DNA of 63,556 nt, filler included, from Octopus bimaculoides (lineage: Eukaryota): NCBI RefSeq assembly GCF_001194135.2. It is 5 parts of 5 records of this genome, joined end to end, with 100 filler letters (N's around TTAATTAATTAA, not from the genome) between each part and the next. Parts side by side here need not be neighbours in the genome. Positions count along the whole stretch, not along the records: positions 43,927 to 62,281 come from NC_068993.1; 4 more parts are not named here. One strand, given 5' to 3'. Below the pieces are notes generated by a model, which made no database searches, had not been told where the DNA came from, and saw only the letters and a program-made list of their open reading frames with translations. This document shows, piece after piece, positions 47,102 to 47,629 of the stretch; the stretch's first letter is position 1; every line of letters begins with the position of its first letter. Position numbers and translations under genes: made by a program.

Positions 47102-47107
47102 TTTATT
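47102..47107 (-). terminator. Candidate polyadenylation signal AATAAA
   Basis: About 100 nt downstream of the 47209 stop on the same strand. Confidence 0.35.
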
Positions 47108-47208
47108 TCAATTTGAGAATCATATTTTCGTTGTACAAATTTCATTCTTTGCTAAAGAAATGGCCGAAATTTGCCGCGGAACTTCGATTATTTTGTATCA
47201 AGCCCTAC

Positions 47209-47547
47209 CTATGCCCTTTTAACTTTCATAGTCTCACGTTGGAAACCCCGTGCTGAGTGTGCTTCTAGGTTGGTAATAGAAGTAGATCTTGATGTAAATC
47301 GAGAAACAAAGCTGCGAAGTCTCTCCCCTGTTCTCATAATAGCCTTCCGGATCTGTTTGGGGATGCTCTCATTTTCCCACGCAACACTCGAATTTGATTT
47401 CGTAACACGGTTGGTTCTTAAAGCTGGATTTGTTATGGGCGCCTGGCTAGCAATCGTCAACTGATCGGCTCTGGTGTATTGCATTCTTTGTAGATAGTTG
47501 TAGAAATCAAATAAAGACCGAATCATCTCGTCTTCGTTTTTATCCAT
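47209..47547 (-). CDS. Candidate intronless orphan protein, 112 aa (MDKNEDEMIRSLFDFYNYLQRMQY...KVKRA)
   Basis: High-complexity, relatively GC/CpG-rich ORF in AT-rich unique DNA; Kozak gaaaATGg; upstream CRE and CATAAA; downstream AATAAA. No recognised family. Confidence 0.55.
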   Translation of the reverse strand: MDKNEDEMIRSLFDFYNYLQRMQYTRADQLTIASQAPITNPALRTNRVTKSNSSVAWENESIPKQIRKAIMRTGERLRSFVSRFTSRSTSITNLEAHSARGFQRETMKVKRA

Positions 47548-47605
47548 TTTCAAAACAAGGAATATCTTGTCTTGTCTCTTCTACAACGCTAAGTTCTTTA
47601 CTTTG

Positions 47606-47629
47606 TTTATGCATTCGTTGTGACGTCAC
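47606..47629 (-). promoter_or_regulatory. Perfect CRE (GTGACGTCAC) plus CATAAA TATA variant
   Basis: TGACGTCA at 47621-47628; CATAAA at 47611-47606, about 60 nt upstream of the ATG. Confidence 0.5.

What the first reader, a model, noticed from the sequence alone, without database searches (positions are those of the whole stretch)
47102..47629. Self-contained CREB-responsive orphan micro-gene candidate
Seen: within about 530 bp on the minus strand lie a perfect palindromic CRE (GTGACGTCAC), a CATAAA box 10 nt downstream, and an ATG in strong Kozak context. These are followed by a 112-codon high-complexity ORF and AATAAA about 100 nt after the stop. The segment is CpG-retaining unique DNA between microsatellites. 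Known: promoter-proximal CRE plus TATA on a short intronless gene is the typical layout of activity-induced immediate-early genes. Inferred: a lineage-specific cAMP/activity-regulated small protein with no family I can recognise.
Basis: partly seen in the sequence, partly recalled or inferred. Interest (0 to 1): 0.72.

Follow-up and report, generated by a model that had tools for sequence, protein, structure and literature searches.

The report
Small conserved orphan gene with CRE promoter
A 112-codon intronless reading frame is kept intact and under purifying selection in a second related species. A perfectly conserved cAMP-response element sits about 75 bases upstream, so this is probably a real lineage-restricted small gene, but nothing here shows when or where it is switched on.

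Summary
These are GTGACGTCAC (47629-47620), CATAAA (47611-47606), aaaATGg (47547), a 112-codon ORF ending in TAG (47211-47209), and AATAAA (47107-47102).

ORF length and the single CRE are each unremarkable by chance, at about 0.25 expected per piece. An orthologous locus from five sequencing runs of a related species changes the picture:
- It has the same 112 codons, the same start and stop positions, and no indels.
- dN/dS is 0.30, and zero over codons 1-21.
- The 82 nt from the CRE to the ATG are 96% identical, against about 70-75% in the distal flank.

The protein has no relative among 1.84 billion representatives, no Pfam family and no PDB match. It is single copy and not a transposon. 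Its exact sequence is already in UniRef, so it is presumably an annotated uncharacterised protein.

The best reading is a genuine, taxonomically restricted, single-exon gene. It encodes a 13-kDa basic, largely disordered protein and is driven by a very compact promoter with a CREB/ATF-type site.

The "activity-induced immediate-early gene" claim is untested. The CATAAA box is not conserved, the 3'UTR has no AU-rich element, and a germline CREM-type role fits equally well. Interest is moderate to low.

The parts
47620..47629 (-). Full palindromic cAMP-response element GTGACGTCAC (core TGACGTCA 47621-47628)
   Evidence: Read. It is the only TGACGTCA in the piece and is identical in the orthologous contigs L001-L005.
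47631..47636 (-). GATA-like hexamer (TTATCT on the minus strand, AGATAA on the plus strand), one base upstream of the CRE palindrome and conserved in the ortholog. Together with about 12 further conserved bases it is all the unique DNA between the CRE and the microsatellite.
   Evidence: for both species. A 6-mer like this could occur by chance.
47606..47611 (-). It is not conserved and reads CGTAAA in the ortholog.
47596..47601 (-). GTAAAG, which reads ATAAAG in the ortholog. The only ATAAA motif has therefore swapped between two sites 10 nt apart in the two species.
   Evidence: That this is compensatory turnover of a TATA-like box is inference.
47548..47619 (-). Core promoter plus short 5' leader. 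With the CRE it forms an 82-nt block that is 79/82 identical between the species and has no indel. It contains the in-frame upstream stop TAG at 47583-47581.
   Evidence: Fisher P = 3e-7 against the distal flank and 3e-5 against synonymous sites of the ORF.
47209..47547 (-). Single-exon ORF of 112 codons plus TAG stop. The product is 13.1 kDa with pI 10.7 and no Cys. It has three parts: an acidic amphipathic helix (1-21), a fast-evolving linker (22-49) and a basic Ser/Thr/Arg-rich C-terminal part (50-112) with three RxxS sites.
47102..47208 (-). Putative 3'UTR up to AATAAA (47107-47102). It is 85% identical in the ortholog, the AATAAA is conserved, and there is no ATTTA.
47083..47094 (-). Two tandem ATTAAA alternative poly(A) signals. 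The first is conserved in the ortholog.
47171..47464 (+). Antisense 97-codon open frame, also open in the ortholog. I judge it a by-product of the sense frame because the wobble positions of the two frames coincide.
   Evidence: It has no conserved ATG, and its part outside the sense ORF differs at 8 of 14 residues.
47649..47702 (.). (AT)27 microsatellite that bounds the conserved block upstream. The ortholog has a CA/TA-type repeat there instead.

Best explanation
This is a genuine, single-copy, single-exon, taxonomically restricted protein-coding gene on the minus strand. Its transcript would be roughly 0.5 kb, from about 47580 to about 47085. It encodes a 112-residue, 13-kDa, strongly basic protein that is predicted to be largely disordered. 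The protein has two constrained modules joined by a freely evolving linker: an acidic aromatic amphipathic helix (residues 1-21) and a basic Ser/Thr/Arg-rich helical segment (residues 50-112) carrying three RxxS basophilic-kinase motifs.

Transcription is most likely set by an unusually compact promoter. All conserved upstream information lies within about 100 nt of the ATG. Its one recognisable high-information element is a full palindromic CRE, the binding site of CREB/CREM/ATF bZIP dimers, placed 8 to 18 nt upstream of an A/T-rich TATA-like element.

Shown here: the sequence elements, their conservation, coding-type constraint, and the absence of any homologue or repeat copy. Inferred: that the gene is transcribed and translated, that a CREB-family factor binds the CRE, and that the product is a phospho-regulated adaptor or regulatory protein.
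For: Coding sequence:
- An ortholog 82% identical in protein was found in five independent Logan contigs from runs SRR11869384, 385, 390, 391 and 394. It has the same 112 codons, the same ATG and the same stop position (TAG to TAA), with no indel in 339 nt.
- dN = 0.10, dS = 0.33 and omega = 0.30. Differences by codon position are 13/10/22.
- Random placement of the same 45 substitutions gives a mean of 30 amino-acid changes against 20 observed (P = 0.0004), and keeps the frame open in only 21% of trials.
- Nonsynonymous versus synonymous sites give Fisher P = 3e-4.
- Omega by segment is 0 for codons 1-21 (4 synonymous, 0 nonsynonymous), 0.90 for 22-49 and 0.21 for 50-112.
- Synonymous divergence (pS about 0.27) matches the distal flank (25-31% mismatches with indels). 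The ORF therefore sits in otherwise neutrally evolving DNA.

Promoter:
- The CRE-to-ATG block is 79/82 identical.
- The CRE, the upstream in-frame stop, the Kozak context and AATAAA are all identical in the ortholog.

Other:
- The exact protein is in UniRef, so it has been called as a gene model before.
- No repeat copy occurs in the piece.
- There are no Pfam, Rfam or tRNA hits.
Against: - There is no transcript, start-site, ribosome or peptide evidence of any kind. The five orthologous contigs look genomic: they start upstream of the CRE and break in microsatellites.
- Only one interspecies comparison is available, and the second species is unidentified.
- The antisense frame 47171-47464 is open in both species with the same omega (0.42 against 0.40). 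In the shared 250 nt, the dN/dS signal therefore does not identify the strand.
- The TATA-like CATAAA is not conserved and no Inr match was found.
- Conservation at about 86% continues roughly 100 nt past the AATAAA, so the 3' end is uncertain.
- The AlphaFold model is poor (pLDDT 53), so the structure says little.
- A 96%-conserved 5' block could serve some other regulatory role.
Confidence: 0.55

Rival explanations
1. One reading: a neuronal, cAMP- or activity-induced immediate-early gene. CREB phosphorylated after stimulation binds the CRE and rapidly induces a short intronless mRNA.
For: A full CRE lies close to a TATA-like element and is perfectly conserved. The transcription unit is short and has a single exon. 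From general knowledge (Conkright et al. 2003; Zhang et al. 2005, cited from memory), full CREs near a TATA box within about 250 bp of the start site are the class most often cAMP-inducible. In octopus only creb and egr1 have been examined as immediate-early genes (bioRxiv 10.1101/2025.10.16.682951), so a lineage-specific one would not have been noticed.
Against: There are no expression data at all. The 3'UTR has no AUUUA destabilising element in either species. The canonical-looking CATAAA is lost in the ortholog. From general knowledge, most genomic CREs bound by CREB are not activity-induced.
Confidence: 0.15
2. A germline (for example spermatid) gene of the CREM/ATF type. Small, basic, fast-evolving, intronless orphan genes with a CRE just upstream of the TATA box are typical of post-meiotic testis genes, and orphan genes in general are often testis-biased.
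For: The product is basic (pI 10.7), Ser/Arg-rich, Cys-free and small. The linker evolves neutrally (omega 0.90). The protein is an orphan. The compact CRE-plus-TATA-like promoter is as described. The comparison with testis CREM targets comes from general knowledge and was not tested here.
Against: The protein is not protamine-like (12.5% Arg). The N-terminal and C-terminal modules are strongly constrained. No expression data are available.
Confidence: 0.15
3. No protein is made. The roughly 640-bp conserved block would be a non-coding regulatory element or a short non-coding RNA gene, and the open frames on both strands would be fortuitous.
For: The most conserved part is non-coding (96% identical). 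Both strands carry open frames in both species. An ORF of this length is expected 0.26 times per piece by chance. Overall nucleotide identity of the ORF (86.7%) is no higher than that of the adjacent 3' region (85-86%).
Against: Substitutions are concentrated at third positions (13/10/22). Codons 1-21 have four synonymous and zero nonsynonymous changes. The start and stop positions are conserved while the stop codon itself changed. There is no indel in 339 nt although the flanks have several. No Rfam family matches.
Confidence: 0.15
4. The constrained frame is the antisense one (47171-47464, plus strand), serving as an internal exon of a larger plus-strand gene. Alternatively, the minus-strand ORF is one exon of a larger gene.
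For: The antisense frame is open in both species with omega 0.42.
Against: - The antisense frame has no conserved ATG.
- Its first 14 codons, which lie outside the sense ORF, differ at 8 positions.
- The same frame is closed by stops beyond 47464 in both species.
- Sense codons 1-28, outside the antisense ORF, have omega 0.11.
- For the sense frame, a conserved in-frame stop lies 11 codons upstream of the ATG and no AG acceptor follows the pyrimidine run.
- The GT after the stop in the window is not conserved in the ortholog.
Confidence: 0.05
5. A transposon fragment, retrocopy or decaying pseudogene.
For: The neighbourhood is full of repeat relics, including a weak reverse-transcriptase match and SINE-like copies.
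Against: The locus is single copy in the piece and in each of the five runs of the other species. No paralogue or parent gene was found among 1.84 billion representatives. There is no TE domain. There are no terminal repeats. The frame is intact and under constraint.
Confidence: 0.03

Closest known systems
Vertebrate CREB target genes with a full CRE next to the TATA box (for example the somatostatin-type promoter; from general knowledge)
   Same: There is a perfect TGACGTCA palindrome a few bases upstream of an A/T-rich box and within about 80 nt of the coding start. The site is conserved between species.
   Different: The TATA-like box is non-canonical and shifts position between species. 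The start site, CREB binding and inducibility are all unknown. The promoter is truncated by a microsatellite about 20 nt upstream of the CRE.
Immediate-early genes of molluscan plasticity (Aplysia ApC/EBP; octopus egr1 and creb as probed in bioRxiv 10.1101/2025.10.16.682951)
   Same: The locus has a CRE-bearing promoter, sits in a mollusc-like genome and would give a short transcription unit.
   Different: Those genes encode conserved transcription factors. This product has no detectable family, no DNA-binding domain and no AU-rich 3'UTR element, and induction has not been shown.
Post-meiotic CREM-dependent testis genes (transition proteins, protamines; from general knowledge)
   Same: The gene encodes a small basic protein, has a compact promoter with a CRE just upstream of a TATA-like box, and is lineage-restricted with a fast-evolving part.
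   Different: The protein is not arginine-dominated. It has a strongly conserved acidic N-terminal helix. No expression data are available.
Taxonomically restricted (orphan) genes of cephalopods, as reported in cephalopod genome papers (e.g. PMC6386654, listed, not read in detail)
   Same: There is no homologue outside close relatives. The gene is short, has a single exon, and encodes a protein predicted to be largely disordered.
   Different: This one shows clear purifying selection on two modules and a recognisable conserved cis-element, which most orphan models lack.

Membership tests
Protein-coding gene (as opposed to a chance ORF) | The frame, start and stop are kept in an ortholog, with no frame-breaking indels | tested here: met
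   The ortholog has 112 codons. The ATG and stop are at the same positions (TAG to TAA), and there are 0 indels in 339 nt while the flanks have indels.
Protein-coding gene (as opposed to a chance ORF) | dN/dS clearly below 1, attributable to this frame | tested here: met
   Omega is 0.30 overall, with permutation P = 0.0004. The antisense frame, whose wobble positions coincide, shares the signal in the overlap. Codons 1-28, which lie outside that frame, give omega 0.11. Only one species pair is available.
Protein-coding gene (as opposed to a chance ORF) | Evidence of a transcript and of translation | not testable with these tools
   No RNA-seq, CAGE, Ribo-seq or proteome is available. The Logan contigs that carry the ortholog look genomic.
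cAMP-responsive CREB target promoter | A full palindromic CRE (TGACGTCA), conserved in orthologs | tested here: met
   The CRE lies at 47621-47628 and is identical in L001-L005.
cAMP-responsive CREB target promoter | A TATA box downstream of the CRE, with the CRE within about 250 bp of the start site | tested here: inconclusive
   CATAAA in the window is CGTAAA in the ortholog. An ATAAAG appears 10 nt further on in the ortholog, where the window has GTAAAG. The start site is unknown.
cAMP-responsive CREB target promoter | CREB-family occupancy and induction by cAMP or Ca2+ | not testable with these tools
   This needs ChIP or CUT&RUN, forskolin or KCl treatment, or a reporter assay.
Immediate-early gene | Rapid induction that does not depend on protein synthesis | not testable with these tools
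   No expression data are available.
Immediate-early gene | An unstable mRNA with AU-rich (AUUUA) elements in the 3'UTR | tested here: not met
   There is no ATTTA in the roughly 130 nt after the stop in either species. This feature is frequent in immediate-early genes but not obligatory.
Transposable element or retrocopy | Multiple copies, TE protein domains, terminal repeats, or a parent paralogue | tested here: not met
   The locus is single copy in the piece and in each run. There is no Pfam domain. There is no paralogue among 1.84e9 representatives. A whole-genome copy count was not possible.
Taxonomically restricted (orphan) gene | No detectable homologue outside a narrow lineage | tested here: met
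   The word-indexed search of 5.8e9 clusters found only the protein itself and one ortholog cluster. The exhaustive HMMER profile search of 1.84e9 representatives found only two tandem-repeat artefacts at E about 3-7e-4. Pfam and PDB gave nothing credible. Coverage of cephalopod genomes in these libraries is unknown.
IER immediate-early response proteins and PKI protein-kinase-A inhibitors (leads recalled from memory) | Sequence similarity to the family | tested here: not met
There is no Pfam hit.

The most novel reading that the evidence does not exclude
An octopod-specific micro-protein gene that has been wired into the CREB pathway. It would be a lineage-restricted, CRE-driven, stimulus-induced 13-kDa disordered kinase substrate acting in neurons of a large-brained invertebrate, and so a new, non-conserved component of activity-dependent transcription.
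Probability: 0.12. Interest if true: 0.6.

Novelty: new member of a known kind. Interest (0 to 1): 0.33.

Why it matters
If the gene is expressed and CRE-dependent, it would be a clean, tiny test case. It has a promoter of about 100 bp and a 339-bp ORF. It could show how a lineage-specific gene acquires regulation by an ancient signalling pathway (cAMP/CREB). It would also be a possible cephalopod-specific marker of CREB activity, where only conserved genes (creb, egr1) have been tried so far. As it stands, it is one well-behaved orphan gene among the many in such genomes, and it is already present in UniRef as an unnamed protein.

Tried and rejected
- Pfam scans of both orthologs found nothing.
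- A profile search of PDB sequences gave only E about 0.65 hits to engineered proteins.
- An exhaustive profile search of 1.84e9 representatives gave two hits at E about 3-7e-4 (P0003, P0004). Both are tandem-repeat proteins with 4 and 9 stretches, so I rejected them as repeat-inflated.
- I recalled from memory a resemblance of residues 5-26 to the IER2 N-terminus, and of RTGERLRS to the PKI pseudosubstrate. BLASTP showed no alignment for either, so both were rejected.
- The AlphaFold2 model was too poor (pLDDT 53, pTM 0.24) to justify a fold search, so none was run.
- Rfam at a permissive threshold and ARAGORN found only microsatellite-driven sub-threshold miRNA look-alikes, and nothing in 47000-47650.
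- I tried to identify the second species through the SRR accessions in the literature. There was no hit for SRR11869385, and the one hit for the prefix was an unrelated plant paper.
- An exact look-up of the window's own protein in the contig index found it not on record.
- The bacterial-type promoter and terminator scanner was not used because it does not apply to this genome.

Full report
**1. The observation**

On the minus strand I read the following:
- GTGACGTCAC at 47629-47620.
- CATAAA at 47611-47606, 8 nt after the palindrome.
- ATG at 47547 in the context gaaaATGg.
- An in-frame TAG 11 codons upstream (47583-47581).
- A 112-codon ORF ending in TAG at 47211-47209.
- AATAAA at 47107-47102, 101 nt after the stop, followed by two ATTAAA.

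An (AT)27 run and CA-rich microsatellites abut the element upstream.

Taken alone, the pieces are not remarkable. First-order Markov simulations of the 17.4 kb of real sequence in the piece give 0.26 ATG-ORFs of at least 112 codons and 0.23 TGACGTCA sites per piece. The real piece has exactly one TGACGTCA. CpG observed/expected is 1.11 in the locus against 0.85 elsewhere, a small difference. No other copy of the unique core occurs in the piece.

**2. Relatives**

Pfam finds nothing. The word-indexed search of 5.8 billion protein clusters returned two entries:
- P0001, the window's own protein.
- P0002, 112 aa and 82% identical.

P0001 is held in UniRef and MetaClust. Someone has therefore already called it as a gene model, although the contig index has no record of it.

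P0002 is encoded on four contigs of about 1 kb from runs SRR11869385, 390, 391 and 394. A one-residue variant, P0005 (P41L), comes from SRR11869384. The five contigs are identical apart from that one SNP. They begin in a CA/TA microsatellite upstream of the CRE and end in an (ATG)n run. I therefore take them as genomic reads from several individuals of one related species. I could not identify that species.

An exhaustive HMMER profile search of 1.84 billion representatives found nothing else. Its only two hits are tandem-repeat proteins at E about 3-7e-4, matched in 4 and 9 stretches, which I reject. A profile search of PDB sequences gave nothing credible. To the depth these libraries allow, the protein is an orphan.

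**3. Is it coding?**

Aligning the window to L001 gives a clear conservation profile:

| Region | Identity | Indels |
|---|---|---|
| CRE to ATG | 79/82 (96%) | none |
| ORF | 294/339 (86.7%) | none |
| Stop to AATAAA | 85% | one 1-nt indel |
| Next 100 nt | 86% | one 17-nt indel |
| Further downstream | 69-75% | several |

Within the ORF, dN = 0.10, dS = 0.33 and omega = 0.30. Differences by codon position are 13/10/22. The synonymous divergence equals that of the distal flank, so the ORF is an island of constraint in neutrally evolving DNA.

I placed the same 29 transitions and 16 transversions at random. This gives 30.0 ± 2.7 amino-acid changes against 20 observed (P = 0.0004), and keeps the frame open in only 21% of trials. 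The stop codon changed (TAG to TAA) but not its position.

Constraint is modular:

| Codons | Omega | Amino-acid identity |
|---|---|---|
| 1-21 | 0 (4 synonymous, 0 nonsynonymous) | 21/21 |
| 22-49 | 0.90 | 15/28 |
| 50-112 | 0.21 | 56/63 |

**4. A caveat I found**

The antisense frame 47171-47464 (plus strand, 97 codons) is also open in the ortholog. It shows the same omega in the shared region, 0.42 against 0.40. This is expected, because its third codon positions coincide with those of the sense frame.

Several observations favour the minus strand:
- The antisense frame has no conserved ATG.
- Its 14 codons outside the sense ORF differ at 8 positions.
- The same frame is stopped beyond 47464 in both species.
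- Sense codons 1-28, which lie outside the antisense frame, have omega 0.11.
- The Kozak ATG, the upstream in-frame stop, the poly(A) signals and the CRE/TATA-like arrangement all fit the minus strand.

I conclude that the minus-strand ORF is the constrained one, and I put "real coding gene" at about 0.8.

**5. One exon or part of a bigger gene?**

A conserved in-frame stop lies 11 codons before the ATG. No AG follows the short pyrimidine run before the ATG. The GT that follows the stop in the window is absent in the ortholog. Nothing else in the 18-kb piece looks like an exon. The remaining long ORFs are microsatellite read-throughs or repeat relics. A self-contained single-exon unit is the simplest reading, but whether the whole locus lies inside an intron of a large gene cannot be told from this piece.

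**6. The promoter**

Conservation upstream ends about 20 nt beyond the CRE. There the window has (AT)27 and the ortholog has a CA/TA repeat. All shared upstream information is therefore contained in about 100 nt before the ATG. It consists of:
- A GATA-like TTATCT at 47636-47631.
- The CRE.
- An A/T-rich stretch.

The window's GTAAAG, 10 nt further on, is ATAAAG in the ortholog. Each species thus has one ATAAA, but at different sites. This may be turnover of a weak TATA-like box, but that is inference. No Inr consensus is present.

The 96% identity of this block is significantly higher than at synonymous sites (P = 3e-5) or in the distal flank (P = 3e-7). The block is therefore functional in some way. 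A CREB/CREM/ATF site is the only element in it with high information content. Binding and cAMP responsiveness remain untested.

**7. The product**

The protein is 13.1 kDa with pI 10.7, no Cys, 20% Ser+Thr and 12.5% Arg. It has no hydrophobic N-terminus, so it is not a secreted peptide precursor.

AlphaFold2 with the two-sequence alignment gives pLDDT 53. Two moderately confident helices (3-23 and 64-89) coincide with the conserved modules, and the rest is disordered. I did not run a fold search on so weak a model.

Three RxxS motifs (R76, R83, R87) are conserved. My working guess is a small phospho-regulated adaptor or regulator that binds partners through an aromatic acidic helix. This guess is inference only. 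Two leads recalled from memory, the IER2 N-terminus and the PKI pseudosubstrate, failed BLASTP outright.

**8. Comparison with what is known, and verdict**

The layout resembles classical CREB targets with a full CRE next to the TATA box. It equally resembles post-meiotic CREM targets that encode small basic proteins. It lacks the AU-rich 3'UTR element common in immediate-early mRNAs.

For octopus, the only paper in the library that addresses immediate-early genes probed creb and egr1 alone. A lineage-specific CREB target would therefore be new, but it is unproven.

The finding is a real feature: a well-supported orphan gene with a conserved CRE promoter. It belongs to a known kind and is already catalogued as an unnamed protein. 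The immediate-early interpretation is one of several open possibilities.

Noticed in passing
window 47171-47464 (+): A 97-codon antisense frame stays open in both species and has the same dN/dS as the sense frame, because the wobble positions of the two frames coincide. This is a reminder that dN/dS alone does not identify the coding strand.
   Followed up: yes
window 47596-47611 (-) and L001 70-85: The single ATAAA motif downstream of the CRE sits at different positions in the two species. The window has CATAAA...GTAAAG and the ortholog has CGTAAA...ATAAAG. Two reciprocal A/G changes 10 nt apart account for this, and it may be compensatory turnover of a TATA-like box.
   Followed up: partly
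window 45649-45980 (-): This is a degenerate reverse-transcriptase relic, frame-shifted between two ORF fragments. The motifs read ...YMAFIDLTKAFD... and ...LFADDSALV... The Pfam RVT_1 match has E = 0.053, below threshold. It is probably an old LINE.
   Followed up: partly
window 48273-48318, 54487-54532, 54672-54717: Three copies of a 46-nt unit (65-100% identical to the reference copy) contain TTCTGAGTTCAAATTCC, which resembles a tRNA B-box. They are probably heads of a tRNA-derived SINE (family D10). Related peptide-like strings recur at about 51270-51430 and 57570-57750.
   Followed up: no
window 61284-61433 (-): An ORF fragment reads ...RPQLRYYGHVIGM...RIARRIL... From memory it resembles the C-terminal region of non-LTR retrotransposon ORF2 proteins. 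It has no Pfam hit.
   Followed up: partly
window 61622-61690 and 61896-61964: A 69-nt segment is duplicated 274 nt apart at 86% identity. Each copy lies next to an (ACT)n/(GCT)n microsatellite (families D8 and D11).
   Followed up: no
window 54606-55983, both strands: Long 'ORFs' of 148-194 codons encoding poly-His, poly-Asp, poly-Ile, poly-Ser and poly-Glu are read-throughs of (ATG)n and (TCT)n microsatellites. They are not genes.
   Followed up: yes
window ~44940-45230, ~48457-48900, ~49885-50135: The piece contains three runs of N (assembly gaps), 994 N in total. They generate spurious giant direct and inverted repeats in the repeat finder.
   Followed up: yes
L005 position 255 (SRR11869384): The only polymorphism among the five orthologous contigs is a nonsynonymous C to T change (P41L). 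It lies in the unconstrained linker of the protein.
   Followed up: yes
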